Of a DNA stretch of 64,000 nt, positions 12,259 to 32,902 are shown piece by piece. Within the stretch, counting starts at the first letter, position 1; each line of letters begins with the position of its first letter. Under the pieces are notes generated by a model, which made no database searches, was not told the origin of the DNA, and saw nothing but the letters and a program-made list of their open reading frames with translations. Position numbers and translations under genes: made by a program. Source of the DNA: Mytilus trossulus (lineage: Eukaryota); NCBI RefSeq assembly GCF_036588685.1, contig NC_086378.1, positions 6,758,001 to 6,822,000 of the forward strand, read 5' to 3'.

Positions 12259-14757
12259 CACTTAAGTAGCTGCCATGTTTTCACTTCATAACAAAGAGAA
12301 ACAAAAATGACGATTATCAATATATTTTCGTAAAATAAAATGATAAAATCGTCCACAGAAAACTAAGTTTATGATTAATACATGCATTGGTTCAAGAATT
12401 GGATAGATATTATTTTTCACCGGTCAGTTGTTTCGTATGACTCAAACGAGTTATGTGGTCTTTTTTTTAAGTTACAAGGCCACACCAATTTAATTTCTTG
12501 TTCTACGGATTTTTGGACTCCAAAAATTGGGGCGAGCGAGCGATTTGAAAATTTTAATAAAAAAATATTTAATTTGAAAATTTTTGAGGCGAAGCTTAAA
12601 AAGTAAAGGCGAGCGATTATAATTTTTTTTTGTAAACATAAAATAGTAGGTTTTGACTATATTAAAACTTGATTTATCACTTGTACCTTGACATTTCTTT
12701 AATTTATGAAGTATTTTTTCCCTGTTCAACAAGAATTAATTGAATAATTAAATCTGGACTATGTATGTGTGATTGACAATGAGACAATTCTCCATCCAAG
12801 TCATAATCAGGTTCAGAACAACCCCTTAATGTTATGAATATCCCTTTTATGAGGGGTCAAAATATTAAAGTTATAATATATTTTTTTTGTAAAAACACTT
12901 TAAGTACAAAAGGGCTTATATTTTCCCCAAAGAACTGTAATATTTGGTATTAAATGGTCAAAACATGTCTAAGAATTTTGTAATATTCCTGGACTTTAAC
13001 CATGCTAACACATTTACTTTAACAGTTTAATATTATTCAAAATAAGTGGACCCATCCCTCTAGAAAAGTTGTTCAAAATATAATGTATTTCTCCTCTTTT
13101 TGAGTAAAAAATTATAAGTTGTCAAAGGTTTTGTATAGTAGCACTGTACAAATCCTTAGTATTTCTATTTTCTTTTCTACAACAGACTGAACAGTAAACA
13201 TGGTAAAATGACCCCTTCATGGCTTCAAGGCCCTTGTCTGAGGGAGGGTTGGTCCCAACCTGATAATAACAAACATAGGTCAAATTACGGCCTTTTACAC
13301 AGTGCTTTGATCAAGACCAACCAGTAAGCTATAAGGGACCACAACTTAGTATTGTACACAATTCGAACAGGAAAACCAACGATCTAAATTATATTTCCAA
13401 ACGGGAAAATACCAATGAACCACATCAACAAACGACAACTGCTGAACGACAGGTCTCTGAATCAACCAGGACAGGTGCACAAACCTGCAGCGGGTATGAC
13501 CGTCACCATACATTATAATTGCAGTTGAAGGCAAATCCTTCAGAAGTTCTTTGTACTTTATTTTAACAACGAACATTTTTTTCAAGGGAATATAAGTTAG
13601 GGGAAAGAAACCAACGTTTTGTTCTGTACTGGTATTTCTATTTATATCGGAGCACTCCCGCTTGGAATAAATTGGTTTCATGCTGAAACAAATATTCTCT
13701 CAGATATTTACAGTGTTGAGGGGTGCTGATATGTTTAAAATCGTTATATAAAGGCTATACTGTGATTTAAAAAAAACAAATGTTGAGATCTAAACCTCGA
13801 TCTTTATATAATATTTACAAAAAAACGCTGCGGGAAATGGACATGATTTCATTTCCGGATGCGGGAAGCGGGAATATAATAAAAATAAAAAAAATCTGTT
13901 TTGAAAAAAATATGTGCGGGCGGGTCCGTCGAACAATGAATCAAATTGGTGTGGCCCAAGGACTTTTATATTTGACATTAAAATCAGAACCACGTTTGAT
14001 GAAAACCAGTATCATATCAAAATGAAAAGGTAGTAACTTAATTCAAACGCTTTAATTTTTTTGTTGTTGTTGTCCATGACGTTATTTCTTTTTATTTCCG
14101 AGTAAGTTGAACATCTACCCTGTGTCATTCTTTAATAAATATACCTGACACATTTGTCGGCAAGTCTTTTAAATACATGTAAATAAAGTGCAAAAAATTC
14201 CAAGTTTTCTATGTTTCCAGGCGTTGTCAGTTTATTTTCGATTTATGAGTTTGACTGTCCCTCTGGTATCTTACGTCTCTCTTTTACTTACTTCTAGTTT
14301 TAATTATTAAAAGTTCGATAACCCGTAGTTTCTGGTGGATCATATGACATGTAATTTTGTTTCTGATGTAGAGTTGTCTCATTGGCAATCATACCATATC
14401 GTCTTATTTTCGTATTGTCAGTACCCTAAGACTTTCAACACCGTATTCACAATGTGTAATTCTTAAATACAAAGATTACTTTCGGCTCAATCTTTTGTCA
14501 TTTCAATTCGTATTCGTAAAATAGTTTGAATATACATTTTAATTCAAAGCGTCAAAATTGCTACAAATTCAGAGTTTGCATGTTCAACTTGTAAGTGATA
14601 CACTGTGTTATGGTGTTAGATGATTTCCTTGGTCAAACTTTACATGAAAACAGCTGTCACCATCAGTATCTATTTCATTTTAAACTGGGAATTAATATTA
14701 ATATTTTGAAATATTCTCTACCATTGTGATAACACAAATTGTGTGTGCAAGTCAAAA

Positions 14758-14950
14758 ATGCAGCAAGTAGTTTTCATAATTGCGGTCTGTGTGTGCTTTA
14801 TGTCAGCTTGTCAAATAACAATATCAGGAGGAAAGTTAAATTCAAATGTCTGTAAAGGGTACGGAAGGCTAGAATCTAAGGTTGATACCCTCGCAGAGAA
14901 GCTTGATCGTAGTCTTGATTTACTCAAGAAAATTGATGATAAAATTAAAG
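14758..14950 (+). CDS. F-type lectin paralogue 1, exon 1 (signal peptide + coiled coil)
   Basis: ATG 14758, MQQVVFIIAVCVCFMSAC, then Leu/Ile/Val-periodic LESKVDTLAEKLDRSLDLLKKI. Donor aaag|gtaatt. 193 nt, phase 1, same length as the paralogue exon at 45278. Confidence 0.85.
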
Positions 14951-16185
14951 GTAATTAATACAAAAAAATATAAATATATTCATTTTTCAGTGCGATCATT
15001 TTTTTTATTATGAAAATTTACTATTGACAGATGTATTTTATAACCATGTGAATATTGCATACTTTGTATGGTTGAGGGTGCATCTAAGTATGAACACATT
15101 TATATCCTACTTATGTAAAAATATCTTGTCTATCATGTTTTGGGATAAGATTTTTGTTTCTCAGTTCTTACCAGGACCAAAAAAAATGATTCCAAAATCA
15201 TCTTGCTATATCAAATTGCCGTCCCTTTTATATTTCAAGCAACACACGTATTATTTAGTTTTCGGTTTAGTGTCTTGCAATACTTGATGGACAACTTTTA
15301 TATTTAAATAAAGGCAACAGTAGTATACCGCTGTTCAAAACTCGTAAATCTATGGACAAAAAACAAAAATGGGGTAACAAACTAAAACTGAGAGAAACGC
15401 ATCAAATATAAGAGGAGAACAACGACACAACATTAAAATGTAACACACACAGAAACGGACTAAGCATTCGACAAAATCCGATGAGAATAACAAATATAAC
15501 ATCAAAACCAAATACATGAATTTGGGAGGGAAAAGTAGCGTGACCCATCTTATAGTAATGTGAGTTCACACTCAAATATAAGAGAAAGAAAACAAACGAC
15601 ACAACATAAACACAACGTTAAATTGTTACACACACAGAAACGAACTATGATATAACAATAGCCATTTTCCTGACTTGGTACAGGACATTTTTCAAGATAA
15701 AAATGATGGATTGAACAGTGACCTATAGTTTAAAATGGTAGAACAAGACAAACATTTTATTTGCATTTGGAATATTGTATTATTTTATCGAGATTTCCTT
15801 TTTAAAACCCTTTCATTTAATATCAACAACGAATATTCATATGGAATTCTGTCCGTTTTGTAACTCGTTTTTCGTGACAAACATGAACAGTCGTTTCATT
15901 GTTTTATATTAAAAAAGAAGATGTGGTATGATTGCCAATGATATAACTCCCCACAATAGACCAAAATGACACAACTATAGGTCACTGTACGGCCTTCAAC
16001 AATAAGCAAAGCCCATACCGCATAGTCTACTCGGGACAGACACACACACACATAATGCGACTGTGTTAAACAAGTCAGCGGGATCCAAACCCTCCCCTAA
16101 CCTGGGGCAGTGGTATAACAGTACAACATAAGAACGAACTTTATTGTCTATTTTTATTGTTCTTTCCCAGCTAGTTAAAGTTTAT

Positions 16186-16332
16186 AAATATATTAGGATT
16201 CCAAGATTTGTTTTCGTGAACTAAATACCATCGACAAGATAATATTCAACATCTGTGTTTTCCATTGGCTGATACATAATTCTAAAAATAACTTTCACAT
16301 AAATTTATATGTATATCGCTTTTGTTTTTATT
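16186..16332 (+). repeat. 147-bp direct repeat, left copy, flanking the palindrome
   Basis: aaatatattaggattcc...gcttttgtttttatt is identical to 25108-25254 (offset 8922). Confidence 0.95.
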
Positions 16333-19300
16333 ATAAACCTCAGATCTATGTACGACCTCAAATCTGTGTCCGTTTCTCAAATCTATGCCCAATCGTGACG
16401 TCAATCGCTAATCTATGTCCATACAAAATTGTTCGACCTCAAATCTGTGGCCGATTTTTAATCATGACGTCATTCGCAAATCTATGTCCTTAAAAAAATA
16501 ATTCGGCCTCAAATCTGTGGCCGATTTTTACTTGTGACGTTTTTCTCAAATCTATGTCCGTTATAAAAGAAAAGGCTTTAAAACTGTAATGTTTGATTCT
16601 TTTTTAGCCATGCGCAAATTTATGCCCGTCTTAAAATTTCGGCCTTCTAGGTTTTTGTCATTCCCATAGTTCAATATTAATTTGGTGGTAGATCTATGTG
16701 TTTTCCATGTGTGTACAAGAGCTTAAGTATCAGTAAATCTTTCGTTTTATGTTGTACTGCTATACCACTGTCCCAGGTTAGGGGAGGGCTGGGATCCCGC
16801 TAACATGTTTAACACCGCCACATTATTTATGTATGTGCATGTCCCAAGTTAGGAGCCTGTAATTCAGTGGTTGTTGTTTGTTCATGTGTTACAGTTTTGT
16901 TAATTTATTTTACATAAATGAGGCCGTTAGTTATCTCGTTTGAGTTTTTTTACATTGTCTTATCGGGCCTTTTATATCTGACTATGAGGTATGGGCTTTG
17001 CTTATTGTTGAAGGCTGTACGGTTACCTGTAGTTGTTAATGTTTGTGTCATTTTGGTCTTTTGTGGACAGTTGTCTCATTGGCAATAATACCACATCTTC
17101 TTTTTTTATACTAGATAGATTATTTTGCTTGTATTTAAAGAGGGACTAAAAAGTCCCTGATTCAAAATATTGTTTTTTAATATAAAAAAGAAGATGTGGT
17201 GTGATTTTTTTTATTTAAGTACGGTTTTGTATGATTTTTGTTTTGATAAAGTAATATCTCCATGTGTGTGGTTAAAATTATGTGTGTGGATTTTATGCCG
17301 CCTTGAAGAATTCAACTACACGTTTTTTCTAACTAAAAAAAATAAAAGAATTACTATTTGTATGCAACTTAAGCGTACTTTAATTGTCTCTAAATTGTTT
17401 CATATTGCTGTTAAATTGACATTCATACCACATTATCTATTGTATGTTACATTAAATATCAATAAAATCATTCTGAATAGTTAAAAATAAAAGTTACGTG
17501 CTCTATATTTTTAATTAAAATATTTGTGAATCACAATAGAGCATATATCAATTGTTTGGTCTTAGCTGATATCTATTTAGTTCAAATGTGAAACTTGTAA
17601 TTATGTCTTTAATCACAAAAATCTTTCCCCGAGAAGGATCATTCTTTATGTTTTGGCATATTCCTTCTCTCCAGAAACCGGATGTAAACACTGCCGTCCC
17701 TTTGTTCATAGCTGGATTTGTTTTGAATTGCAAATACTCCCCAATAGTAGGAGTGAAGATATCCTGATAATTGTCAGAAAACAGTTCAAGAGGATTTATC
17801 TCTAGTTGACGTTTTTGAAAATAGTCCATCAACCCACTATTCATTACAGATTTTCCTCCAGTCTAAAAAAACAAATCATAAAGCAATTTTAAACCATTTG
17901 TATTAATAAATAAAATATCGACATTAACTTTTTTCGTATAAACCACATTGACACTGATAATGAATAGATACATAAAAAGTAAAAGGATAAGAAAATAAAA
18001 TATTAAATTAACATTTGATATTACTATTTACATATCTACATGTATGACTTACGGGAATAGCATTTTCTTTATCGTTGCTATCATTTACAAAGCGCCTTTT
18101 GTAAAGTTCCTTGTAATACGGACTAGCACCTTCCATGGGATCGAGATTATTTTGCATCTGAAAGTACATTAAGTAAAATATGTGGAGAAAAAAATAATTT
18201 AAAAAGAACATCATTAATTTTACATGATTTTTTTCATTTCGATTAGTTTTAATTCATTCAAAGGTGAAAACATGTAAGACGGGTCAACCTAATTTTTTTT
18301 TAAATTAGCGTATAACTTTTTTTCAAAACACACATAGACTATGTACACATGTGCAAAGTAGCAGAAATATTCTATCATACTAAAACATTACTTACAACTT
18401 CTAAAGGTGCAATATCATTTGTTTCCGTAGTAAAGTATGTATCTCCGGTTTCTGTAACTATATGATCATTTTCCAACTGCCTCCCTTTGTTTGTCTCCTG
18501 AACTTCTTGGTGTTCTTCATTAGGTTCCGACACAATATCCATGGCTTCTTTAATAGAAATAAGTTTAAACAAACAAATTAAATAGTACAGTCGATGGTTG
18601 TGTAACGTCCAGTGGCAAATTTAACGCAAACATATAGAATATTAACACAGTAAATTTAAAATATGCTTTTTTTATATAGAGAAGACCGTTGGTTTTCCCG
18701 TTTGAATGGTTTTTACACTAGTTATTTAGGGGCCCTTTATAGCTTGTTGTTCAGTGTGAGGCAATGCTCCGTGTTGAAGGCCGTACATTGACCTATAATG
18801 GTTTACTTTTTTTTTAATTGTTATTTGGAGGGAGAGTTGCCTCATTGGCACTCACACTACATCTTCCTATATCTATTTACATTTATTTTGCTCATAAAAT
18901 TCAATTTCAAAATTAACTTTGTTTAACTAATATCAGAGCCTTAAAAAGTAAAACCTTTCAGATTACTATTGAAGTAAATAAAGACTTATATTATTACCTT
19001 CAAACGTTACATCTCTGTCATTTATGTTTCTTAACATCTCCAAATTTCCATTTTCATCTTCATTTATGTTACTTTCAGGTAATATTTCACCAATCTCTTC
19101 TTCTTCATTCTCTACATCTAAGTGTGCCTGTGCTAGGAACTTTCTTTCATCTTCAGTTAGGAGCACAAATGGAAGCTATAAAATAGAAACGGTTTTATTG
19201 CACGTAATATTTTCACCTTTACTACAATAGATAAATACGTTATATTTTAATACAGTACATGTATTACTTTGGCATTTTATAATATTTTATGATAATTTAT

Positions 19301-20716
19301 GAATAGAATAGGATGAATTTAGTGTTAAACTTTCATATAGTTTCACAAGATGTGTGTGTGTGTGTTACTTTGTTTGTGTTGTGTTGTGTTGTGTTATGTT
19401 TTTTTTTTTTTTTTTTTTTATATATTTCAGCTGTTTAATTCGCCATATATCTTTAAATAAAGCTGTAAGCTAAGTTTATAGTTACCTGTTCATCAATAGG
19501 TGGTGCAAAGTTAGGTCTTTTAAAGTAAAGTTGATATGGTGTAGAAGGCTTTGTACTTTTGTGTACCCTGTTGTTGTAGTTATAATAAAATTCTGGCAAT
19601 TTTGAAGGCCAGTCTTTTTCTAACGACATCTCTTTTCTAAAATATTCAGTAAGTGTTCTATTAAAGCGTTCTACGCGTCCTTGGCTTTGTGGATGATAGG
19701 GACGTCCATGTATCTGTCTGGTCTTAAAAATTGAAACAACTTCAGCCAAGTTTACATTTGTAAATTCTTTGCCGTTGTCACTTTGTAATATTCTTGGCGG
19801 ACCATACAGATATACATATTTTAAAGTTAGTTCCGCTACATCTTTTGCAAATTTTCCTTTTAATGGACCACCAAATGCCAAGCGAGAAAAGCAATCTACT
19901 ATGTTGCAAATGTAGTTTTAACCTCTGACTGGTGGCATTTTCTTCAAGTCTATTTGCCAACGACTGTTAGCATAAGTTGCAGGAATTGGGCGCCTTAAAA
20001 CTGTTGTTTTGGGAATTTCTACTGCATTGTTACAGCCCTGGCAGTTTACGTTTAATTTAAATAGTACCTTGATGCTTTCTCTAACAACAGGAAATACTGT
20101 ACTTCTTAAACAGTCATAAATTGCCTCATATTTTCTATGGTCTTTCGAGTGGTTTTTGTTAATCAGGTGAATTAATTGCTCTTTGTCTAAACATTTTCTA
20201 TGATTGCTATTTAAGTCTTGAGATTTTTTGTAGATACATTTAGATTCTTGATCATAGAAGTAAAGCGATAAAAACTTTTTTACCATTCTGTCCGAAAACG
20301 GCACTCTCAATTCGTCAACAATTTTTTTTGCTCCCCAATTTTGATGTTCTTCTTTGGCCTTTGCAATCTGTACAATGTACGGCATATCAGCCCAAAACGA
20401 TTCTGGATTTGGATCCTTTGAAATACCTTTTTTGCGCTTGTTTGATATAGTGTATCCTTCATTTGGAATAGTGTCCTGCTCCGCCATCATTCTTTTTTTG
20501 CTATGACGTCATATACTTGATGACGTTTTGTTATGTTTAACGTCGATGAAAGGACATAGATTGGAGCCAAAAATGGCCATAGATTTGAGTAAATAAAGGA
20601 CATAGATTTGAGACAATACAGGACATAGATTTGGAAAATCTATGACGCAATATAAAAAGGACATAGATTTGGGGAAAGGACATAGATTTGAGGCCGGACA
20701 TAGATTTGAGGCTTAC
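16332..20716 (-). mobile_element. Ginger-type DNA transposon, left (inverted) arm of the palindrome
   Basis: Reverse complement of 20722-25108, with all ORF pairs identical. Termini are imperfect (outer TAT instead of TGT; inner terminal base missing). Confidence 0.9.
17548..20490 (-). pseudogene. Mirror copy of the five-exon transposase
   Basis: Identical translated ORFs on the minus strand, with the same stop at 19918-19920. Confidence 0.88.
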
Positions 20717-20720
20717 TATT

Positions 20721-23700
20721 TGTAAGCCTCAAATCTATGTCCGGCCTCAAATCTATGTCCTTTCCCCAAATCTATGTCCTTTTTATATTGCGTCATAGAT
20801 TTTCCAAATCTATGTCCTGTATTGTCTCAAATCTATGTCCTTTATTTACTCAAATCTATGGCCATTTTTGGCTCCAATCTATGTCCTTTCATCGACGTTA
20901 AACATAACAAAACGTCATCAAGTATATGACGTCATAGCAAAAAAAGAATGATGGCGGAGCAGGACACTATTCCAAATGAAGGATACACTATATCAAACAA
21001 GCGCAAAAAAGGTATTTCAAAGGATCCAAATCCAGAATCGTTTTGGGCTGATATGCCGTACATTGTACAGATTGCAAAGGCCAAAGAAGAACATCAAAAT
21101 TGGGGAGCAAAAAAAATTGTTGACGAATTGAGAGTGCCGTTTTCGGACAGAATGGTAAAAAAGTTTTTATCGCTTTACTTCTATGATCAAGAATCTAAAT
21201 GTATCTACAAAAAATCTCAAGACTTAAATAGCAATCATAGAAAATGTTTAGACAAAGAGCAATTAATTCACCTGATTAACAAAAACCACTCGAAAGACCA
21301 TAGAAAATATGAGGCAATTTATGACTGTTTAAGAAGTACAGTATTTCCTGTTGTTAGAGAAAGCATCAAGGTACTATTTAAATTAAACGTAAACTGCCAG
21401 GGCTGTAACAATGCAGTAGAAATTCCCAAAACAACAGTTTTAAGGCGCCCAATTCCTGCAACTTATGCTAACAGTCGTTGGCAAATAGACTTGAAGAAAA
21501 TGCCACCAGTCAGAGGTTAAAACTACATTTGCAACATAGTAGATTGCTTTTCTCGCTTGGCATTTGGTGGTCCATTAAAAGGAAAATTTGCAAAAGATGT
21601 AGCGGAACTAACTTTAAAATATGTATATCTGTATGGTCCGCCAAGAATATTACAAAGTGACAACGGCAAAGAATTTACAAATGTAAACTTGGCTGAAGTT
21701 GTTTCAATTTTTAAGACCAGACAGATACATGGACGTCCCTATCATCCACAAAGCCAAGGACGCGTAGAACGCTTTAATAGAACACTTACTGAATATTTTA
21801 GAAAAGAGATGTCGTTAGAAAAAGACTGGCCTTCAAAATTGCCAGAATTTTATTATAACTACAACAACAGGGTACACAAAAGTACAAAGCCTTCTACACC
21901 ATATCAACTTTACTTTAAAAGACCTAACTTTGCACCACCTATTGATGAACAGGTAACTATAAACTTAGCTTACAGCTTTATTTAAAGATATATGGCGAAT
22001 TAAACAGCTGAAATATATAAAAAAAAAAAAAAAAAAAAACATAACACAACACAACACAACACAAACAAAGTAACACACACACACACACATCTTGTGAAAC
22101 TATATGAAAGTTTAACACTAAATTCATCCTATTCTATTCATAAATTATCATAAAATATTATAAAATGCCAAAGTAATACATGTACTGTATTAAAATATAA
22201 CGTATTTATCTATTGTAGTAAAGGTGAAAATATTACGTGCAATAAAACCGTTTCTATTTTATAGCTTCCATTTGTGCTCCTAACTGAAGATGAAAGAAAG
22301 TTCCTAGCACAGGCACACTTAGATGTAGAGAATGAAGAAGAAGAGATTGGTGAAATATTACCTGAAAGTAACATAAATGAAGATGAAAATGGAAATTTGG
22401 AGATGTTAAGAAACATAAATGACAGAGATGTAACGTTTGAAGGTAATAATATAAGTCTTTATTTACTTCAATAGTAATCTGAAAGGTTTTACTTTTTAAG
22501 GCTCTGATATTAGTTAAACAAAGTTAATTTTGAAATTGAATTTTATGAGCAAAATAAATGTAAATAGATATAGGAAGATGTAGTGTGAGTGCCAATGAGG
22601 CAACTCTCCCTCCAAATAACAATTAAAAAAAAAGTAAACCATTATAGGTCAATGTACGGCCTTCAACACGGAGCATTGCCTCACACTGAACAACAAGCTA
22701 TAAAGGGCCCCTAAATAACTAGTGTAAAAACCATTCAAACGGGAAAACCAACGGTCTTCTCTATATAAAAAAAGCATATTTTAAATTTACTGTGTTAATA
22801 TTCTATATGTTTGCGTTAAATTTGCCACTGGACGTTACACAACCATCGACTGTACTATTTAATTTGTTTGTTTAAACTTATTTCTATTAAAGAAGCCATG
22901 GATATTGTGTCGGAACCTAATGAAGAACACCAAGAAGTTCAGGAGACAAACAAAGGGAGGCAGTTGGAAAATGATCATATAGTTACAGAAACCGGAGATA
23001 CATACTTTACTACGGAAACAAATGATATTGCACCTTTAGAAGTTGTAAGTAATGTTTTAGTATGATAGAATATTTCTGCTACTTTGCACATGTGTACATA
23101 GTCTATGTGTGTTTTGAAAAAAAGTTATACGCTAATTTAAAAAAAAATTAGGTTGACCCGTCTTACATGTTTTCACCTTTGAATGAATTAAAACTAATCG
23201 AAATGAAAAAAATCATGTAAAATTAATGATGTTCTTTTTAAATTATTTTTTTCTCCACATATTTTACTTAATGTACTTTCAGATGCAAAATAATCTCGAT
23301 CCCATGGAAGGTGCTAGTCCGTATTACAAGGAACTTTACAAAAGGCGCTTTGTAAATGATAGCAACGATAAAGAAAATGCTATTCCCGTAAGTCATACAT
23401 GTAGATATGTAAATAGTAATATCAAATGTTAATTTAATATTTTATTTTCTTATCCTTTTACTTTTTATGTATCTATTCATTATCAGTGTCAATGTGGTTT
23501 ATACGAAAAAAGTTAATGTCGATATTTTATTTATTAATACAAATGGTTTAAAATTGCTTTATGATTTGTTTTTTTAGACTGGAGGAAAATCTGTAATGAA
23601 TAGTGGGTTGATGGACTATTTTCAAAAACGTCAACTAGAGATAAATCCTCTTGAACTGTTTTCTGACAATTATCAGGATATCTTCACTCCTACTATTGGG

Positions 23701-25108
23701 GAGTATTTGCAATTCAAAACAAATCCAGCTATGAACAAAGGGACGGCAGTGTTTACATCCGGTTTCTGGAGAGAAGGAATATGCCAAAACATAAAGAATG
23801 ATCCTTCTCGGGGAAAGATTTTTGTGATTAAAGACATAATTACAAGTTTCACATTTGAACTAAATAGATATCAGCTAAGACCAAACAATTGATATATGCT
23901 CTATTGTGATTCACAAATATTTTAATTAAAAATATAGAGCACGTAACTTTTATTTTTAACTATTCAGAATGATTTTATTGATATTTAATGTAACATACAA
24001 TAGATAATGTGGTATGAATGTCAATTTAACAGCAATATGAAACAATTTAGAGACAATTAAAGTACGCTTAAGTTGCATACAAATAGTAATTCTTTTATTT
24101 TTTTTAGTTAGAAAAAACGTGTAGTTGAATTCTTCAAGGCGGCATAAAATCCACACACATAATTTTAACCACACACATGGAGATATTACTTTATCAAAAC
24201 AAAAATCATACAAAACCGTACTTAAATAAAAAAAATCACACCACATCTTCTTTTTTATATTAAAAAACAATATTTTGAATCAGGGACTTTTTAGTCCCTC
24301 TTTAAATACAAGCAAAATAATCTATCTAGTATAAAAAAAGAAGATGTGGTATTATTGCCAATGAGACAACTGTCCACAAAAGACCAAAATGACACAAACA
24401 TTAACAACTACAGGTAACCGTACAGCCTTCAACAATAAGCAAAGCCCATACCTCATAGTCAGATATAAAAGGCCCGATAAGACAATGTAAAAAAACTCAA
24501 ACGAGATAACTAACGGCCTCATTTATGTAAAATAAATTAACAAAACTGTAACACATGAACAAACAACAACCACTGAATTACAGGCTCCTAACTTGGGACA
24601 TGCACATACATAAATAATGTGGCGGTGTTAAACATGTTAGCGGGATCCCAGCCCTCCCCTAACCTGGGACAGTGGTATAGCAGTACAACATAAAACGAAA
24701 GATTTACTGATACTTAAGCTCTTGTACACACATGGAAAACACATAGATCTACCACCAAATTAATATTGAACTATGGGAATGACAAAAACCTAGAAGGCCG
24801 AAATTTTAAGACGGGCATAAATTTGCGCATGGCTAAAAAAGAATCAAACATTACAGTTTTAAAGCCTTTTCTTTTATAACGGACATAGATTTGAGAAAAA
24901 CGTCACAAGTAAAAATCGGCCACAGATTTGAGGCCGAATTATTTTTTTAAGGACATAGATTTGCGAATGACGTCATGATTAAAAATCGGCCACAGATTTG
25001 AGGTCGAACAATTTTGTATGGACATAGATTAGCGATTGACGTCACGATTGGGCATAGATTTGAGAAACGGACACAGATTTGAGGTCGTACATAGATCTGA
25101 GGTTTACA
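20721..25108 (+). mobile_element. Ginger-type (Ginger2/TDD-like) DNA transposon, right arm, with complete TGT...ACA termini
   Basis: 5' TGTAAGCCTCAAATCTATGTCCGGCCTCAAATCT and 3' reverse complement TGTAAACCTCAGATCTATGTACGACCTCAAATCT form an imperfect TIR. Subterminal CAAATCTATGTCC arrays at both ends. Integrase gene present, with no gag, RT or LTR. Confidence 0.9.
20948..23892 (+). pseudogene. Five-exon integrase-like transposase (~584 codons) with one in-frame TAA
   Basis: Exons 20948-21952, 22265-22442, 22893-23044, 23283-23387 and 23578-23892, all GT-AG and phase-compatible. HHCC finger (HSKDH...CQGC), WQID, SDNG-x-HGRPYHPQSQGRVER with exact D-35-E spacing. TAA at 21518-21520 is followed in frame by NYICNIVDCFSR. 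Confidence 0.88.
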
Positions 25109-25254
25109 AATATATTAGGATTCCAAGATTTGTTTTCGTGAACTAAATACCATCGACAAGATAATATTCAACATCTGTGTTTTCCATTGGCTGATACATA
25201 ATTCTAAAAATAACTTTCACATAAATTTATATGTATATCGCTTTTGTTTTTATT
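25108..25254 (+). repeat. 147-bp direct repeat, right copy
   Basis: Identical to 16186-16332. Confidence 0.95.
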
Positions 25255-28200
25255 GTAAACCACAGATATTCACTTTATTGAATATCGAAAAAAATATTCC
25301 GACACGGAAAACCTCTGACCTTTAAATAGCATAATAGTATTGTTTTTAAATCATTCAGAGATGGAAGATGTTATGATTTTTTTAAGTGCACAATCTATGA
25401 TAATGTTTGATTGGAATTTTCTGCAATAATAATTTTGAAATTTTAAGTAAAGGAATATATCTCTCTCATGCTAAGCTCTTATCTATTGTCGAGAATTGAC
25501 TATACTTTAGGCATTTTTATGGTTTTAGTAATTCCTCAACGTTTGTTACAGATGTTTTATTCGCAAAAGTGGGCCTCGAGCTTTACTGAATAGATAAACT
25601 CATCACAGATACCATATCATAGATAAATAACTTTAGACGATAATTATCGGGTCCGTGTAACACTTATCAATTCAAAGTTTTAAAAAGTTTTGAAATTTTA
25701 GATTTTTGGAATTTTGATCAAAGTTTTAAAATATTCAAATTTCAAATTGTGTAAAAGTTTGAAATTTTAAAATTTTAGCCAAATTATTAAAATATTAAAA
25801 TTCAAAATATCGTTAATAAATTTGATAGTTTAGGAATTTGATCAAACTTTTAAGATACTAAACCTAACGTGCAATTTTGATTATTTCACTTTTTGAAAGT
25901 TTGATTTTTTAAAATTTTTGATTAAAATATCAAAAATAGAAAAGGGGCGAAAAGAGGGGTACCTGTAAACACTGATGTAAACACGCCTCTGATAACAATT
26001 ATTCTTAGTTAAAAATAAATAGCACGAAATATATAAATCATTTTTAATTACAAAACAAATAATGAAAAGAAGAAGTTTTTTTTTTTTATAAAACATATTA
26101 GACATCACATAGGATAACAGTATCCTGATATTTTAAGGTTGTACACTCTCAAAAAAAATTAGTTAAACCTATTTACACTGGAATCAAATAGGTTGATTTA
26201 AATCTCTTATATAAGGTTAGCGTTTTAGATAAATAATTCAGAGCTATTTGGTGTTCCCAGTGCCCAACATTTAGAAAAAAACAGTTAAAACTGGCCAACT
26301 CGCAGTAAACCAAATAGTATTTTTCGCCTTTTTGACGTTCCTGATGAAGGTAGACCCAGATATAAAAGCGCTACAACTTTAAACATTTTGTTTTCTTTTT
26401 TTATCGATTGCATAACGATAATATACTGCCGTTTATGATTTATTTCAGTTCCAAGAAATGATACAAAAGGAATACTTAATGTATAGCGTAAAAAGTAAAA
26501 TCACAAAAATACTGAACTCAGAGAAAAATCAATACGGAAAGTCCATAATCACATGGCAAAATCAAATAACAAAACGCATCAAAAACGAATAGACAAGAAC
26601 TGTCACATTCCTGACTTGGTACAGGCATTTTCAAATGTAGAAAATGGTGGATTAAACCTGGTTCTATAGCGCTAACCCTCTCTCTTTAATAACAGTCTCT
26701 TCAAATTCCGTTATATTTACATGATGTGTTAAATAAACAGTCACAATTAATAAAATAGTCAAAATATGGGTATATCAGTCATCATCGCATAACAATTTTA
26801 AAAGGGACAATTTAACAGAATACAAAAACATTTATCTACGAACACATGGATTGACTTGAGTGTCTGACGTCATAAAATTTGTATACGTCACATAAATTTG
26901 TCGTTCAATGTGCATACAAACAGTTGCGTCGCAATGAACGTTGCGCTAGGCATGCTTCAGCTGGCCCCTCGACACTAAAGGTTACTGGTTCAGTGATTAT
27001 AGACGTCATACTAAACTCCGAAATATAACAATAAACTAAAATTAAAATCACACAAGACTTAAAAGGACAGAGGCTCCTGAATTTGGACAGGCGCACAAAT
27101 GCGGCGGAGTTAAATACGTTTCGTGAGATCAAACCCCCCCCCCCGTTATACCTCTAGCCAATAAAGAATGTAAAACATACAGTAATACGAACAGTAAAAC
27201 GCACTTGAAAAGGAAATACAAGTCCTATGTCAGAATAGGAAACAAAAGAAACTTATCAAAATGACAATGATTATAAATTACAAAAAGGACAGCTATAATA
27301 AAGCTAGCAGTTACTGCCATACGCCAGCTCCAGACCTCAATTAAACTAATTGAAAGGTTATGCCTTCATTATGCACACTCTCTCCCTGTTGTATTTATTG
27401 CTAATTTGTTCCGGAACATTCATGAAATATTTGTCACTGGCAACAAAAAGTCGATAATTCAGAATAGGTTGCAGGTTGTTTACGTACAAATTACGAAGAA
27501 ACTTAGAATTCAACTCCCTCGGACAAAGTAGCCCTTATCGCTGGATTGTGATATGTTTTAACTTCACTTTGGTCAAACATCTCTTCAATTGTTTCGGTTC
27601 TGATTTTTCTTGACTTTCAAATTTCAGTTTTCAGCGTTCCGTGCTCAAATAAGAAGATACAAATACGGAACATTTATATCCCTTAATAATTTTTTTTTAT
27701 TTCTGGTCTCTTGTGGAGATTTGCCATATTGGCAATAATGCCACATCTTCTTTTTTATATTTAGGACGACACTGGGACCTGTACTTTTGCATCGTTTAAA
27801 TCGCTGAAATTCTTGCTTTTTCGTCTGCTCATTTTCAAACATATATTATTTGCAGTAATAAAATAAAATAGTTGAAGTATTCAGTACTAAGAATATCTTA
27901 TAGGTCTAATCTTAGGACAGTGTCGATAAACATGCCACAGTTATCATAATGTTATTATGTAACACATGTATTTTAATTTAAATGAATAAAAGTCTTTTAT
28001 TTACTCGCGTTTACATTTTAGGCATTAAGCTTAATGCCTGCATACAATTTTCAGGATTTAAGCTTAATGTCTAACATCATTTAGGCAACCGACTTCCTGC
28101 CTAGGCGTTAGCTTATTGCCTAGGATTTAAGTTTAATGCCTAATTTCTCTTATTGCCGCTAACATATATATATATATATATATAAAGATCACTATAATAA

Positions 28201-28257
28201 ATGTTCTTGTGTATAGAAATATATATAGATTACTAATAAATCCAACATTTCCGGTAT

Positions 28258-28320
28258 GAATAGTTTTAATTCACTAGTACTTTCATGTTTAAATAACAAT
28301 CTTCAGGTGAAACTATACAT
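28258..28320 (-). ncRNA. Minimal type I hammerhead ribozyme in the Penelope 3' region
   Basis: Minus strand: TTCAC-CTGAAGA-ttgttatttaaacat-GAAA-GTAC-TA-GTGAA. Stem I TTCAC/GTGAA (extendable), palindromic stem III AGTACT, weak AU-rich stem II. Confidence 0.75.
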
Positions 28321-28434
28321 GATTAACGTAACTATGTAACGGTAGGTATGTAACGTCATAGTTGTCGTTGAGTATATAAAGGGAGATAAATCGTATTACA
28401 CTTAGTCTATATATAGAAGTATGGAGCGTCATTA

Positions 28435-30558
28435 TTACACAATAGAAAATGCATAGTTTGCATTCAATCGTGATTTAAATTTTAAAATAAAATGTTTTTC
28501 CTTGACTTCTCGTGTAATGTCACAACCCATATTCATTTTATAAAATGGGAATATTTTAAAAAATCCCCCTCCACATTCGTCTAAATGTTTGCTTAGGGGG
28601 ATTTTTCTGTATTGTGGCTGCCGTATATGTTGTCTATGAATGCGCACTCTTTCTGTTACACTGTTCCCTGTTTGGCCGATATAAATTTCCTGGCAACCAT
28701 TACATTTAATGCAATAAATTAAATTCTCGGATTTACAGGTAATGTCTTCGTTGGTAAAAAGTGATAGACCATTAGGTATGTCCATTCCCTTGCCAACATG
28801 GATATACGGACATGCCCCACAACGACTATCTCGACATTTTGACACACTGAATGTTCTTTTTTGGTCGAATCGTGCTCGGGTCAATAGTCGTTTAAGGTTT
28901 TGTGGTTGCCGTTTACTTTGTAGAAGTGTTTCTGTATTTATTAAACGGCGCATCTTTTCATCCTGACCAAGAATAGGTAAATTTGCCTTTGCAACGGGAA
29001 TAATTTTAAAGTTCCGTGGATTATGTGTAATAACGAACGGTATTTTATCGTTGTTATTACTCTGCTCCTCGCAGGTGGAGCGTAGTTGGTTGGTTGGAAT
29101 CTGTTTTGCCATTTGAATTCCCCTTTCTATTAAAGTCTCTGGATAGTTTTGCTTGATCAAAAATGATTGTAGTTCCTCTAGACGGTCTTCTCTCAAATGT
29201 TCATCCTCGACTACTGTACATATTTTTCTTGCTAAACAATAGGGGATATTCCTTTTGGTATGAGATGGGTGGCACGAATTAAAATCTAAATACTGATGAG
29301 TATCAGTACCTTTGTAAAAAATATCTGTTTTAATTTCAGTGCCATCTTTAATAACAAGAATGTCTAGAAACGGTAATTGGTTGAAATTTTCATCCTTCGT
29401 AAATTTTATGGAGGTATGAAGGTTATTTAGTATGTCCGAAAATAGTTGGAGTTCTTCGTCGGATTTGTTCCAGATAATGAAGCAATCATCAAGGTATCTT
29501 TTCCATGATAATTCAAATTCACTTGCAAATTCAACTCCAAAATTATTTTCAACTTCTTGATACAGTCTTTGTTCAAGGAAGCCCATGACTAATGTTGCAT
29601 ATGTTGGTGCAAATTTTGTTCCCATTGCTGTCCCCCGATGTTGCAAATAGTTCTTGCCATTGAAATAGAAAGAATTGTTTTCAAGAATAAGTTTAGTTGA
29701 ATCGAGTATAAAGTCAACAGTGAATCGATTTGGTATTGCATCTCGATGTTTTGCAACCCAATATTGTATTGCCTCTATTCCTAAATCGTGTGGAATGTTC
29801 GTATATAGGCTTGTGACATCGAAGCTTACTAAACGAGCGTGAACCGGTGCTATTTTTGGCAGGTGTGAGAGAAAATCTATATCGTCTCTTATATAGCTCG
29901 GTACATATTTACATAATGGTTTCAAAATTGTGTCTAAAAAGTTGCTTAGTCTGTGAGTGGGACTTGCTGGACCTGCAATGATGGGTCTAAGTTTAAGATC
30001 CGTCGGTTTTTGCACTTTTATGTATTCGTTTTGCTGAGAATTAATAGCCGATTGGATCTCCTTTGATTTATGGATTTTTGGAAGGCCATAAAAGTTACTC
30101 GTTTTCCTTTCGAAATTTTTCAAGTAATCATACTCTTTTTCCGTAGTGGCCGTTGTGTATTTGTTCAGTACGGTATTCATTCTTCTCTTGACTAGATGAT
30201 CTATATTATCAGGAATTTCTGAGTAAAATGTCGAATCATTGAGTTGTTCTTCAACTTTAATTCTATAGTAGTCTGAATCCATTATTACTATTGCCCCACC
30301 TTTATCGGCCTGCTTAATTATTATGCTTTTATCGTTTCTTAGATTTTGGAGTGCTGACTTTTCGCCCTTAGTTAAGTTGTGGTTGACTTTAATTGGTGTA
30401 AGTGGGTAATTGGACAAATTTTCGATATAGTCATCTAAACACTTGTTTCTTCCGGTATTTGGAATAAAGGTAGATTTGTTTCTTACTAATGAGTTGTCCT
30501 CCTCACTTTCTTTATCCGCGAAATATTCAGTGAGTCTCAATCTTCGACAAAATTTCAT
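28435..30558 (-). CDS. Penelope-like reverse transcriptase + GIY-YIG endonuclease
   Basis: FYGLPKIHK, LRPII, SFDVTSLYTNIP, GTAMG, RYLDD, LPFLD. Cys-rich linker CRDSRCGAC, then NLIYCIKC..C..IYIGQTG..R...H. About 700 uninterrupted codons. Confidence 0.95.
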   Translation of the reverse strand: MKFCRRLRLTEYFADKESEEDNSLVRNKSTFIPNTGRNKCLDDYIENLSNYPLTPIKVNHNLTKGEKSALQNLRNDKSIIIKQADKGGAIVIMDSDYYRIKVEEQLNDSTFYSEIPDNIDHLVKRRMNTVLNKYTTATTEKEYDYLKNFERKTSNFYGLPKIHKSKEIQSAINSQQNEYIKVQKPTDLKLRPIIAGPASPTHRLSNFLDTILKPLCKYVPSYIRDDIDFLSHLPKIAPVHARLVSFDVTSLYTNIPHDLGIEAIQYWVAKHRDAIPNRFTVDFILDSTKLILENNSFYFNGKNYLQHRGTAMGTKFAPTYATLVMGFLEQRLYQEVENNFGVEFASEFELSWKRYLDDCFIIWNKSDEELQLFSDILNNLHTSIKFTKDENFNQLPFLDILVIKDGTEIKTDIFYKGTDTHQYLDFNSCHPSHTKRNIPYCLARKICTVVEDEHLREDRLEELQSFLIKQNYPETLIERGIQMAKQIPTNQLRSTCEEQSNNNDKIPFVITHNPRNFKIIPVAKANLPILGQDEKMRRLINTETLLQSKRQPQNLKRLLTRARFDQKRTFSVSKCRDSRCGACPYIHVGKGMDIPNGLSLFTNEDITCKSENLIYCIKCNGCQEIYIGQTGNSVTERVRIHRQHIRQPQYRKIPLSKHLDECGGGFFKIFPFYKMNMGCDITREVKEKHFILKFKSRLNANYAFSIV

Positions 30559-30573
30559 TAGATTTATTAGTAA

Positions 30574-30608
<35 letters not shown>

Positions 30609-32657
30609 AAAACCTCCCTCATTGAAGACTAGAACAACCTTAATTGGGACACCATGCATTCAGTATTCATACCGTACCAAAAAAATATTAACTAAACTAT
30701 TTGATACAAGGCAATATAATTATGATCGTCATACAACCGATAAAAATGAAACGATGACGTTAAAAATTACGACCAACGCGCTTTTCTGGATCAACCTTCT
30801 TAGGGAACGCTGAAAGATGAATATTTAGGGCCAACAACTTACAAAGAATAGATTAAAACTTGAAAGATGATCGTTCATAATGTACATGGAATGATATATT
30901 CTTTGGCCAACATGATTGCAGAAAGTAAAAAGTCGTAGAGCAAAACAGAAAAATTTTAAATCAAAAGAGATAATACACTGTGTATTGAGCCTTTTTATTG
31001 CTTAGAGTTCAATAGGAAATATATATACATGTTCAACCTAATCATACTATTTGAACAACTGCGAGTTGTTCAGTTTTTATTGTTACTCCTGTTTCTCCCA
31101 AAATATGGATGCTAGAAAACCAGCAAGTAAAATGGCCAATATCAGAGCCGTACGTCTTGTTTTAAAATGGATTCTCTTCTTTTGAGAAATATTTATTTTG
31201 TAATCCAATTTTTCAACGCTTACAACTGTCTGTCTGTGGTTTTATTTTATACATTAACTTTTAAGTATCAGTAAGTTTTCAATTCATATTGTTTTGTTTC
31301 GTTCTGCTTTTAATTGTATTCGCTTTTTACGGGTACCCCTCTTTTTGCCCCTTTTCTATTTTTGATATTTTAATCAAAAATTTAAAAAATCAAACTTTCA
31401 AAAAGTGAAATGATCAAAATTGCACGTCAGGTTTAGTATTTTAAAAGTTTGATCAAATTCCCAAAATATCAAATTTATAAACGATATTTAGAATTTTAAT
31501 ATTTTGATAATTTGGCTAAAATTTCAAAATTTCAAAACTTTTACACAATTTAAAATTTTGATATTTTAAAACTTTATTCAAAATTCCAAAAATCTAAAAT
31601 TTCAAAACTTTTTAAAACTTTGAATTGATAAGTGTTACACGGACCTTATCGAAATGCACATCTAGTTTATTAAAACTTTTACCGGTTTTTTTTATATTTC
31701 AATTAGTATGATCAATGTTAGTCGCAAAAGTGATAGCACTAAACTTTCTTTCAATATATCACTCTTTGATAATTATAAATATAGGATAGCCTCATTATCT
31801 AGGAGGACCCATTAATAATAAAGGTCATCAAGAAGAAATAACTCCCAAGACTATAGATATGTTCTTACACTTGCGTTCACTGCATTGTAGATCAATAGGC
31901 GATTAGATTTGAGTTGAATGATTCAATCAATTGCTTTCACGCGCTAAGTAGTAGCACAGTAGAATTTTGTTGAGATGTTGCTATATTAATTATTTAGCTT
32001 TAATCTAAACTCTCTCATCTTTATTAGTTAAATTCCACTTCAGGAAAAACAAAATACATTTAACAACAGCTAATAAGTCCATGATTCATTTCCAAATACT
32101 GGGAAAAAGCACAATCCTTTATATATGTATGGTTAGATAATAATATACATTCAACAGGCATTCATTTCACGTACCAAGAAAAGCCCTTCGAATTGTTCTG
32201 ACTCAAGCAAGTACGTAAAAGGAAAGTGAAATCCTCTTTCAGATAGAAATACTGAAATGGTAATGTTCTCAAAGTCACCAGTCAGACACACAGTGTGTTA
32301 AGCTCATCCATCTTAGGTAGTTGTAAAAGTTTTAGAAATAATACAAACCTTGTATGATGGAGTCCTAATCGAGTACTTTCATGATTATTATTGATCTCTG
32401 TCTTTAACACACTACATTTTGGTAACAACTTCATGGTAAAAAAATAGAATATCAAAAAATAAAGAACAGTATAAAACACAACATAGAAAACTAAAGACTA
32501 TGCAACACTAATATAACCAAAAACGTAGTAACATGTCTGATAAATTACACTCTATTGTGTAAATCTTAATTCATCATGTATTCTCCACTGTTATTGAACA
32601 GAGGTCGCTTGGATATAAACATTCACGTTAATTTGTATTACCCTAACTATCTTTCAG

Positions 32658-32902
32658 ACGGTAAACAAAACAAATGTATAATTAAGAACGTTGCTCTGAA
32701 GAAAAAAAGCAACAAAGCTCATGGCATCTGAAAACACATTCCTGGGGAAATTATGTGTGCTGTGCATCTGAATATGCGAATGATGGAAATCCAGCAACCT
32801 ACTCACATACCAACCATGACAATTTACCATACTGGTGGGTAGATCTAGGAAAAGTGTATGATATAAAGTGGATTGAAATTATAAACAGACCAGATCTTGC
32901 TG
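32658..32902 (+). pseudogene. F-type lectin paralogue 1, exon 2, with a 1-bp frameshift in an A7 run
   Basis: Acceptor ctttcag|, donor g|gtaagt. 245 nt versus 246 nt in paralogue 2. Corrected reading: NVALK..QQSSW..YANDGN..YSHTN..PYWWVDLG..IINRPD. The deletion is at 32702-32708. Confidence 0.8.

What the first reader, a model, noticed from the sequence alone, without database searches (positions are those of the whole stretch)
16186..25254. 8.8-kb palindrome: head-to-head dimer of a whole Ginger-type transposon, bracketed by a 147-bp direct repeat
Seen: 16334-20716 is the reverse complement of 20722-25106 with a 5-nt centre. The only internal difference I found by eye is (TG)7 versus (CA)8 (~19351 / ~22074). 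Each arm is one full TIR-to-TIR element, so both the fold point and the outer limits coincide with transposon ends. The layout is L-X-TE(-)-TE(+)-X-Y with X = 147 bp. Established: Ginger elements insert singly with ~4-bp TSDs, and spacerless multi-kb palindromes are unstable. Inference: this is a very recent TIR-mediated inverted duplication, or a compound transposition product I cannot match to a described type. An assembly or fold-back artefact cannot be excluded.
Basis: partly seen in the sequence, partly recalled or inferred. Interest (0 to 1): 0.92.

Follow-up and report, generated by a model that had tools for sequence, protein, structure and literature searches.

The report
Head-to-head transposon dimer in mussel
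Two identical copies of a Ginger2-type jumping gene sit head to head as an 8.8-kb perfect palindrome inside a probable mussel intron, and the junctions show it arose by a fold-back and repair accident rather than by normal transposition; no sequencing reads could be checked.

Summary
Window 16334-20716 is the exact reverse complement of 20722-25106, apart from one AC repeat unit. Each arm is a complete element. A 145-bp stretch of otherwise single-copy DNA is directly repeated on both sides.

The element is Ginger2-type. It has TGTAA...TTACA ends, a 59-bp TIR and an integrase-core (rve) transposase. In 12 of 15 other copies it has a 4-bp TSD, mostly TATA. Both arms share one in-frame stop codon.

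The dimer is not a normal insertion:
- It has no 4-bp TSD.
- The 4-nt centre (TATT) is the reverse complement of the AATA that follows the right arm.
- The chromosome carries imitations of the transposon end in register at both outer edges of the repeat: 14 of 16 nt at X|Y and 6 of 7 nt at L|X.
- It is the only abutted-end junction of this family in the 1.3-Gb assembly.

Best reading (0.55): one element was copied back on itself at a break at its A end, and the free B end was joined through microhomology. This is very recent, since the arms show no substitutions.

Rivals are integration of a dimer with uncoupled ends, an assembly error, and others. Both tools that could have given independent sequence evidence were unavailable, so the structure rests on one assembly. 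It resembles the maize "Mu killer" and "Ac killer" loci.

The parts
16180..16186 (+). GTTTATA. A 7-nt imitation of the transposon B end (GTTTACA, 6/7), sitting directly at the L|X boundary of the left repeat.
   Evidence: With the following AATA it matches the B end plus its flank at 10 of 11 nt. P of at most 1 mismatch in 7 is about 0.0024.
16187..16331 (+). X-left: a 145-bp copy of host DNA that is single-copy apart from this duplication.
   Evidence: Identical to 25109-25253. These are the only two copies in the genome.
16332..20716 (-). TE(-): a complete Ginger2-type element, B end outside and A end at the centre. The outer end reads TATAAACC (canonical TGTAAACC). The inner end GGCTTAC lacks the terminal A.
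19453..20490 (-). Transposase reading frame of TE(-), with an in-frame stop at 19918-19920.
   Evidence: Its translation is identical to that of the right arm.
19351..19364 (+). (TG)7 microsatellite. This is the only internal difference from the other arm, which has (AC)8 at 22073-22088.
20717..20720 (+). Centre spacer TATT, the reverse complement of the AATA at 25109-25112.
   Evidence: This is the only abutted-end junction of the family in the assembly.
20721..25108 (+). TE(+): a complete 4388-bp Ginger2-type element, TGTAAGCC...GGTTTACA, with a 59-bp TIR (85% identity) and six or more 13-nt subterminal repeats (CAAATCTATGTCC) at each end.
20948..21985 (+). Transposase frame of 346 codons. 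It shows an HHCC-like motif (H-x3-H-x31-C-x2-C), then D (WQIDL), D (SDNGKEF) and E (GRVERFN). It is interrupted by TAA at 21518-21520.
   Evidence: rve scores 45.5 bits against a cut-off of 32.6. Frame read. Most other copies carry TAC at this codon; one carries TAA.
24313..24700 (+). High-copy SINE-like repeat nested in this subfamily of the element. It is mirrored at about 16740-17125 in the other arm.
   Evidence: families D4-D7. One search returned thousands of first-look candidates for this part.
25109..25253 (+). X-right: the second 145-bp copy. Its first 4 nt, AATA, fit the family's target consensus at 5 of 6 positions.
25254..25269 (+). TGTAAACCaCAGATaT. A 14/16 imitation of the transposon B end, in register at the X|Y boundary. 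It is host DNA that is unique in the genome.
   Evidence: 2 mismatches; unique; P about 4e-7 per position.

Best explanation
This is a real, very recent rearrangement of a Ginger2-type cut-and-paste transposon, made by the host's break-repair or replication machinery rather than by a normal insertion.

Steps I infer:
1. One element was broken or nicked at its A end, most likely by transposase supplied in trans, since both arms carry a stop codon.
2. DNA synthesis ran to that end, through the 4-nt target-site duplication, and turned back on the complementary strand. This could be a hairpin or fold-back template switch. It produced a second, inverted copy with the 4 nt as the loop.
3. The free B end was joined to the chromosome where the host sequence happens to imitate that end. 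The joining points on the two strands lie 145 bp apart, so the stretch between them was copied twice, like a giant target-site duplication.

Two variants fit. In variant (a), the right arm is a resident element at its original site with TSD AATA, and the rest was built by serial template switching (MMBIR/FoSTeS-like), possibly copying X-left from the empty homologue. In variant (b), a free fold-back dimer was captured at two end-like sites.

If the surrounding intron is transcribed, the locus would yield a 4.4-kb perfect hairpin RNA and could act as a trans-silencer of the family.

Shown here: the anatomy, the family, the uniqueness and the recency. Inferred: every step of the mechanism and any silencing role.
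For: - Arms are identical over 4383 nt and the X copies over 145 nt, while the nearest other copy is 98.6-99.5% identical and carries a 206-bp deletion. The arms are therefore copies of each other, not two draws from the family.
- Both arms share the same TAA at a codon that is TAC in most other copies.
- Normal insertions of the family have a 4-bp TSD (12 of 15 copies; TATA in 10) and no long flank repeats. The dimer's flanks are TTAT and AATA, so it has no TSD.
- The centre TATT is the reverse complement of the AATA that follows the right arm's B end. That is what copying through one TSD and folding back predicts. The chance value is about 0.013 per orientation.
- A 14/16 imitation of the B end sits exactly in register at X|Y. 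P is about 4e-7 per position, it is unique in the genome, and it is the only hit with at most 2 mismatches outside the element ends in 64 kb. A 6/7 imitation, 10/11 with AATA, sits at L|X.
- The fold point and both outer limits fall on the element ends to within 1-2 nt.
- The flanks are direct repeats and the window has no Ns, which argues against a read or assembly fold-back.
- No other A-A, B-B or B-A abutted junction exists in 1.3 Gb, so this is a singular accident, not a family habit.
- The centre folds as a perfect hairpin: -266 kcal/mol for 301 nt, z = -42.
Against: - There is no read-level support. The structure rests on one assembly.
- Variant (a) needs a 14/16 end imitation to lie by chance 145 bp from a resident element, roughly 1e-4.
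- Variant (b) needs a free dimer to be made and replicated outside the chromosome. It explains TATT/AATA only if TSD nucleotides stayed on the excised ends.
- Three details are unexplained. The inner end of the left arm lacks one A. The outer end of the left arm reads TA instead of TG. The L|X 7-mer carries the same C-to-T change, so each X copy is bracketed by a perfect inverted 7-mer pair.
- The cleavage chemistry of Ginger2 transposases is unknown.
Confidence: 0.55

Rival explanations
1. Transposase-made integration of a pre-formed dimer. The palindromic dimer, with two perfect B ends, was excised elsewhere and integrated here by the transposase. Its two strand transfers were uncoupled and guided to sequences that look like its own ends, as in the end-targeted insertion of bacterial IS30/IS911. 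They landed 145 bp apart instead of 4 bp, and fill-in gave a 145-bp TSD.
For: - Both joining points lie exactly at the phosphodiester where a real end would be cleaved, next to the imitations at 16186|16187 and 25253|25254.
- The geometry is that of a TSD, with a direct repeat on both sides.
- The outer ends are complete, apart from one changed base at the second position of the left outer end (TATAAACC for TGTAAACC).
- From my own knowledge, 145 bp is close to one nucleosome core, and retroviral-type integrases favour nucleosomal DNA.
Against: - None of the 15 other copies examined shows an end-like motif next to its TSD or a long TSD.
- This reading leaves TATT = reverse complement of AATA as a coincidence (about 0.03).
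- It does not say how the dimer arose.
- The left outer end has TA instead of TG.
- No functional transposase of this subfamily was found among the copies examined.
Confidence: 0.2
2. Assembly or library artefact. The palindrome, or the duplication of X, does not exist in the animal's DNA.
For: - No reads could be examined.
- Other first-stage notes list several large perfect palindromes in this assembly, which might hint at a systematic problem.
- Near-spacerless kilobase palindromes are expected to be unstable (established knowledge).
Against: - A fold-back chimeric read would give inverted flanks, but these are direct.
- A merge of two haplotypes cannot create the A-TATT-A junction.
- All three breakpoints fall on transposon ends to within 1-2 nt and carry TSD-related and microhomology signatures. 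Random shearing or assembler joins would not produce that.
- The arms differ by a microsatellite unit.
- There are no Ns, and the locus lies deep inside a chromosome-scale contig.
Confidence: 0.1
3. Two independent insertions at or near the same site in opposite orientation (double insertion), combined with an unrelated tandem duplication or unequal exchange of X.
For: - The family prefers TATA-like targets and was recently active, with copies at 99%.
- Double insertions are documented for other transposons (PMC5932611, listed, not read in detail).
Against: - Double insertion predicts the same 4-mer, in direct orientation, at the centre and on both outer flanks. The observed 4-mers are TTAT, TATT and AATA.
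- The arms are identical to each other but not to any other copy, and they share a private stop codon.
- It needs an extra event for X and leaves the end imitations unexplained.
Confidence: 0.05
4. A composite unit [TE(+)-X-TE(-)] was circularised at its A ends, with TATT as the circle junction. It re-entered by homologous recombination to give a tandem array, and the outermost elements were later lost, leaving 7-nt and 16-nt end stubs.
For: - Each X copy is flanked on both sides by B-end sequence pointing inward.
- From my own knowledge, abutted ends separated by a TSD-length spacer are the hallmark of IS3-family circle junctions.
Against: - It needs at least four events.
- The stubs carry mismatches while everything else is identical.
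- No B-A or A-A junction and no TE-X-TE unit exists elsewhere.
Confidence: 0.05

Closest known systems
Ginger2/TDD DNA transposons (Bao, Kapitonov and Jurka 2010, PMC2836005)
   Same: TGTNR termini, 4-bp TSD inside an AT-rich RTATAY target, TIRs of 50-180 bp, and a transposase with an HHCC-like motif and a DDE integrase core. The group is described in molluscs (Aplysia, Littorina).
   Different: Described elements are single insertions. No head-to-head dimer, long flank duplication or end-like target has been reported for them. Phylogenetic placement of this transposase was not tested.
Maize 'Ac killer' composite insertions and 'Mu killer' (bioRxiv 10.1101/2020.01.07.897926; PMC3440606)
   Same: These are natural inverted duplications of a DNA transposon created by aberrant transposition and repair. 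They lie where a host promoter can read through and are predicted to give kilobase hairpin RNA.
   Different: The maize loci contain partial elements fused at arbitrary points, with spacers and normal 8-bp TSDs. This locus has two complete elements fused exactly at their ends with a 4-nt centre. No RNA or small-RNA evidence is available here.
Fold-back inversions and microhomology-mediated template switching (MMBIR/FoSTeS); palindrome formation at hairpin-capped breaks
   Same: An inverted duplication with a very short spacer, microhomology at the other junction, and duplication of adjacent sequence.
   Different: The breakpoints here are fixed by transposon ends. The microhomology is unusually long (8 perfect, 14 of 16 overall).
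Hybrid-element insertion of P elements and reversed-ends or sister-chromatid transposition of Ac/Ds (PMC3744419, PMC4270019)
   Same: Transposon ends from different chromatids act together and leave a transposon flanked by a direct duplication of neighbouring host DNA.
   Different: Those products keep one element, or elements in their original order, and show a normal TSD at the new junction. The 4-bp TSD was tested here and is absent.

Membership tests
Ginger2/TDD superfamily | Termini 5'-TGTNR...YNACA-3' | tested here: met
   The ends are TGTAAGCC...GGTTTACA, shared by more than 15 copies. The feature definition comes from PMC2836005.
Ginger2/TDD superfamily | 4-bp TSD within an AT-rich RTATAY target | tested here: met
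   12 of 15 copies have a perfect 4-bp TSD, TATA in 10. Non-TATA cases (TGTA, TATG) favour a 4-bp TSD over a 6-bp one. The dimer itself lacks a TSD.
Ginger2/TDD superfamily | TIRs of about 50-180 bp | tested here: met
   The TIR is 59 bp at 85% identity, with subterminal 13-mers.
Ginger2/TDD superfamily | Transposase with a DDE integrase core | tested here: met
   Pfam rve scores 45.5 bits against a cut-off of 32.6. D, D and E residues are seen in frame. Homologues are annotated as integrase catalytic domain proteins.
Ginger2/TDD superfamily | H2C2 zinc finger present; GPY/F and YPYY motifs absent | tested here: inconclusive
   H-x3-H-x31-C-x2-C was read by eye in 20948-21517, but no Pfam zinc-finger hit was found. 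[quoted passage not shown]
Ginger2/TDD superfamily | Clusters with Ginger2 transposases in a tree | not tested
   No named Ginger2 reference sequences were available in the tools.
Ginger1 | CCGG/CCGT-specific 4-bp TSD | tested here: not met
   The TSDs are TATA-like.
GingerRoot | 6-bp GC-rich TSD and 100-150 bp TIR (PMC6839031) | tested here: not met
   The TSD is 4 bp and AT-rich, and the TIR is 59 bp.
Transposon 'killer' hairpin loci (Mu killer / Ac killer) | Inverted duplication of transposon sequence | tested here: met
Transposon 'killer' hairpin loci (Mu killer / Ac killer) | Transcribed into dsRNA, yielding small RNAs that silence the family in trans | not testable with these tools
The intronic position is only inferred.
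Canonical composite or alternative transposition product | Family-typical TSD flanking the inserted unit | tested here: not met
   The flanks are TTAT and AATA. A 145-bp repeat is present instead.
Microhomology-mediated fold-back rearrangement | Short-spacer inverted junction plus microhomology at the other junction or junctions | tested here: met
   The spacer is 4-5 nt. Matches are 8 perfect or 14/16, and 6/7 (10/11 with AATA), in register.

The most novel reading that the evidence does not exclude
The centre is a fossil of an unresolved transposon-end hairpin whose loop is the 4-nt TSD. The outer junctions would then be strand transfers aimed at sequences that imitate the element's own ends, about one nucleosome (145 bp) apart. 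If so, this locus would be the first in vivo trace of how Ginger2 integrase-like transposases cut (piggyBac-like hairpins on the element) and choose targets (IS30/IS911-like end targeting). It would also be the birth of an animal 'killer' hairpin locus against a DNA transposon.
Probability: 0.12. Interest if true: 0.8.

Novelty: new variant of a known kind. Interest (0 to 1): 0.5.

Why it matters
How a genome first recognises an active DNA transposon is an open question. In maize the trigger can be an accidental inverted duplication of the element read through from a host promoter. This locus would be a clean animal counterpart: two complete elements, a 4-nt loop, probably in an intron, and apparently very young.

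Its junctions also hold rare mechanistic information for a superfamily whose transposition chemistry has never been studied. They show the TSD at the fold point and end-like microhomology at the outer joins.

A near-spacerless 8.8-kb palindrome is also expected to be fragile. If it is real and heritable, it is a natural test case for palindrome stability in a bivalve genome.

All of this depends on read-level confirmation, which is still missing.

Tried and rejected

**Searches that found nothing**
- Other abutted junctions of this family: A-A, B-B and B-A patterns with up to 20-nt spacers and 2-3 mismatches returned only this locus.
- X or the start of Y as a repeat: both are unique.
- Other copies with long flank repeats or end-like flanks: none.
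- A Pfam zinc-finger hit for the N-terminal piece: none.
- An intact transposase in the close copies: none. More distant relatives have open frames of 340-368 codons.

**Models rejected**
- Simple fold-back read chimera: it predicts inverted flanks.
- Haplotype-merge artefact: it cannot make the centre.
- Double insertion: the flank 4-mers do not match.
- ODIRA-type inverted triplication (PMC4689423): it predicts an inverted X.
- Gene conversion as the source of the X|Y imitation: the interior mismatches argue against a conversion tract.
- Circle integration or a tandem array of TE-X-TE: too many steps.

**Left unresolved**
- The intron model 14951-32657 given in another note does not keep the reading frame into the F5/8 type C exon by my count. 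The gene model is therefore unverified.
Full report
**1. Observation**

The repeat finder reports inverted arms 16331-19425/22015-25109 and 19351-20716/20722-22087, with 5 nt between the inner arms. It also reports a direct repeat, 16180-16345 against 25102-25267. A global alignment of the reverse complement of the left arm to the right arm shows no substitution over 4383/4385 nt. The one difference is an AC unit: (TG)7 at 19351-19364 against (AC)8 at 22073-22088. The window has no N and no other large palindrome.

**2. The genome and the element**

The window is C6:6758001-6822000 of a 1.3-Gb assembly in 541 contigs, with GC about 32%. The closest protein homologues are overwhelmingly from Mytilus species, so this is a mussel genome.

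The arm sequence has dozens of relatives in the genome. Aligning the ends of more than 15 copies with their flanks fixes the termini as 5'-TGTAAGCC...GGTTTACA-3'. I call these the A end and the B end. The TSD is 4 bp: 12 of 15 copies have a perfect one, TATA in 10. Copies with TGTA or TATG decide for 4 bp rather than 6 bp.

The TIR is 59 bp at 85% identity, followed by six or more copies of a 13-nt subterminal repeat at each end. One reading frame (20948-21985) carries an HHCC-like motif and the D, D and E residues of an integrase core. Pfam rve scores 45.5 bits against a cut-off of 32.6.

These are the defining features of Ginger2/TDD elements as given by Bao et al. 2010: TGTNR ends, 4-bp TSD, RTATAY target, 50-180 bp TIRs, and presence in molluscs (PMC2836005). 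The Ginger1 target (CCGG) and the GingerRoot TSD (6 bp, GC-rich; PMC6839031) are not met.

Both arms carry the same in-frame TAA (21518-21520 and 19918-19920), where most other copies have TAC and one has TAA. The close copies I examined are also broken or deleted. More distant relatives keep open frames of 340-368 codons.

**3. Anatomy of the locus**

The layout is:

L...AGTTAAA [GTTTATA, 16180-16186] | X, 145 bp, 16187-16331 | [TATAAACC...TE(-)...GGCTTAC, 16332-20716] | TATT, 20717-20720 | [TGTAAGCC...TE(+)...GGTTTACA, 20721-25108] | X, 145 bp, 25109-25253 | [TGTAAACCaCAGATaT, 25254-25269] | TCAC...Y

The two X copies are identical, and X occurs nowhere else in the genome. The start of Y is unique too.

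Five points depart from a normal insertion:
- (a) The dimer has no 4-bp TSD. Its flanks are TTAT and AATA.
- (b) The centre TATT is the reverse complement of the AATA that follows the B end of TE(+). Read in the orientation of TE(-), its A end is preceded by AATA. The A flank of one arm and the B flank of the other therefore make the TSD pair of a single element.
- (c) The host sequence at X|Y matches the B end at 14 of 16 positions, exactly in register. The per-position probability is about 4e-7. Outside the element ends it is the only match with at most 2 mismatches in the window.
- (d) The host sequence at L|X matches the last 7 nt of the B end at 6 of 7 positions, again in register, or 10 of 11 with AATA.
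- (e) Two single-base oddities remain. The inner end of TE(-) lacks its terminal A. Its outer end reads TA for TG, and this is the same C-to-T change (on the ...GGTTTACA-3' strand) that distinguishes the L|X 7-mer. As a result each X copy is bracketed by a perfect inverted 7-mer pair.

**4. Uniqueness and age**

Pattern searches for A-A, B-B and B-A abutted ends find only this centre in 1.3 Gb. The nearest other copy (C5:39562896-39567090) is 98.6-99.5% identical and has a 206-bp deletion. With no substitution in 4383 + 145 compared positions, the two halves separated at least an order of magnitude more recently than they did from any other copy. This is an inference, and gene conversion between the arms could also keep them identical.

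**5. Real or artefact**

The argument is therefore indirect.

- A fold-back chimeric read gives inverted flanks, but these flanks are direct.
- Merging two haplotypes cannot create the A-TATT-A junction.
- All three breakpoints fall on transposon ends to within 1-2 nt and carry TSD-related or microhomology signatures. Shearing or assembler joins would not produce this.
- The arms differ by a microsatellite unit.

Other first-stage notes list further large palindromes in this assembly. This slightly raises the prior for a systematic problem. I put an artefact at about 0.1.

**6. Mechanism**

Normal transposition of a composite is not supported, because the TSD test fails. The centre is what one expects if synthesis, or a transposase-made hairpin, ran through the A end and the 4-nt TSD and then turned onto the complementary strand. 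The outer joins are what one expects if ...GGTTTACA-3' ends paired with end-like host sequence on opposite strands 145 bp apart, so that X was copied twice.

Two variants fit:
- Variant (a): TE(+) is a resident insertion with TSD AATA, whose right junction fits the RTATAY target at 5 of 6 positions. The rest arose by serial template switching. If X-left was copied from the empty homologue, the TA at 16332-16333 could be an allelic SNP. The cost of this variant is that a 14/16 imitation must lie by chance 145 bp away, roughly 1e-4.
- Variant (b): a free fold-back dimer was captured at end-like sites chosen genome-wide. About 1100 such 16-mers are expected in the genome. The cost is that a dimer must be made and replicated off the chromosome, and TATT/AATA becomes a coincidence unless TSD bases stayed on the ends.

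I cannot separate the two variants from sequence alone, and I give the class 0.55. A transposase-made integration with uncoupled, end-targeted strand transfers gets 0.2. The joining points are exactly where a real end would be cleaved, and 145 bp is close to one nucleosome core, but no other copy shows such targeting. Double insertion and a circle or tandem-array origin get 0.05 each, for the reasons given under the rival explanations.

**7. Context and possible effect**

The locus lies on the plus strand between an ORF with a signal-peptide-like start and a coiled-coil-like tail (14743-14958, with a GT donor near 14951) and an exon with an F5/8 type C domain (32686-32919; PF22633, 37.4 bits). 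It is therefore probably intronic. By my count, however, the donor-acceptor pair proposed in another note does not keep the frame, so the gene model is unverified.

If the region is transcribed, the RNA would fold into a 4.4-kb perfect hairpin. The central 301 nt alone give -266 kcal/mol, z = -42. That is the architecture of the maize Mu killer and Ac killer loci, which arose by aberrant transposition and silence their families through small RNAs (PMC3440606; bioRxiv 10.1101/2020.01.07.897926). No expression data could be examined here.

**8. Verdict**

This is a new variant of a known kind: a transposon inverted duplication made by aberrant transposition and repair. It is notable for its completeness, its TSD-derived centre and its end-like microhomologies. 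Interest is 0.5, held down by the lack of read-level confirmation and by resting on a single locus.

Noticed in passing
window 28435-30609 (-): An uninterrupted 724-codon ORF with reverse transcriptase (RVT_1, 34.9 bits) and a C-terminal GIY-YIG-like domain. This is a Penelope-like element, apparently intact, about 3 kb downstream of the palindrome.
   Followed up: partly
window 7520-9232 (+): A single 570-codon ORF with a secretin-family 7TM domain (7tm_2, 71.6 bits). It is probably an intronless adhesion or secretin-like GPCR gene.
   Followed up: partly
window 14743-14958 and 32686-32919 (+): A signal-peptide/coiled-coil-like ORF and an F5/8 type C (NedA-like galactose-binding) exon flank the region. 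If they belong to one gene, the palindrome is intronic. The frame across the proposed 14951-32657 intron did not close by my count.
   Followed up: partly
window 15890-16131, 16740-17125 and 24313-24700: A very abundant SINE-like repeat (thousands of first-look candidates genome-wide) is nested in this subfamily of the Ginger2 element. A separate copy lies in L just upstream of X, forming an extra 85-91% inverted repeat with the copy in the left arm.
   Followed up: no
G000:C6:2117359-2117916, C3:24761375-24761929, C12:2575072-2575626: More distant Ginger2-like relatives (50-62% protein identity) have open frames of 340-368 codons without stops. They are possible sources of transposase in trans.
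   Followed up: no
L015 (G000:C17:4476927 region): An older copy whose A end is preceded by a partial A-end-like sequence (TTGTAAGCCTAAAATATAT). It may be a nested or tandem end fragment.
   Followed up: no
window 16180-16186 / 16332-16338 and 25102-25108 / 25254-25260: Each X copy is bracketed by a perfect 7-nt inverted pair: GTTTATA...TATAAAC on the left and GTTTACA...TGTAAAC on the right. The two pairs differ by a compensating T/A versus C/G change. No model I tried explains this covariation.
   Followed up: partly
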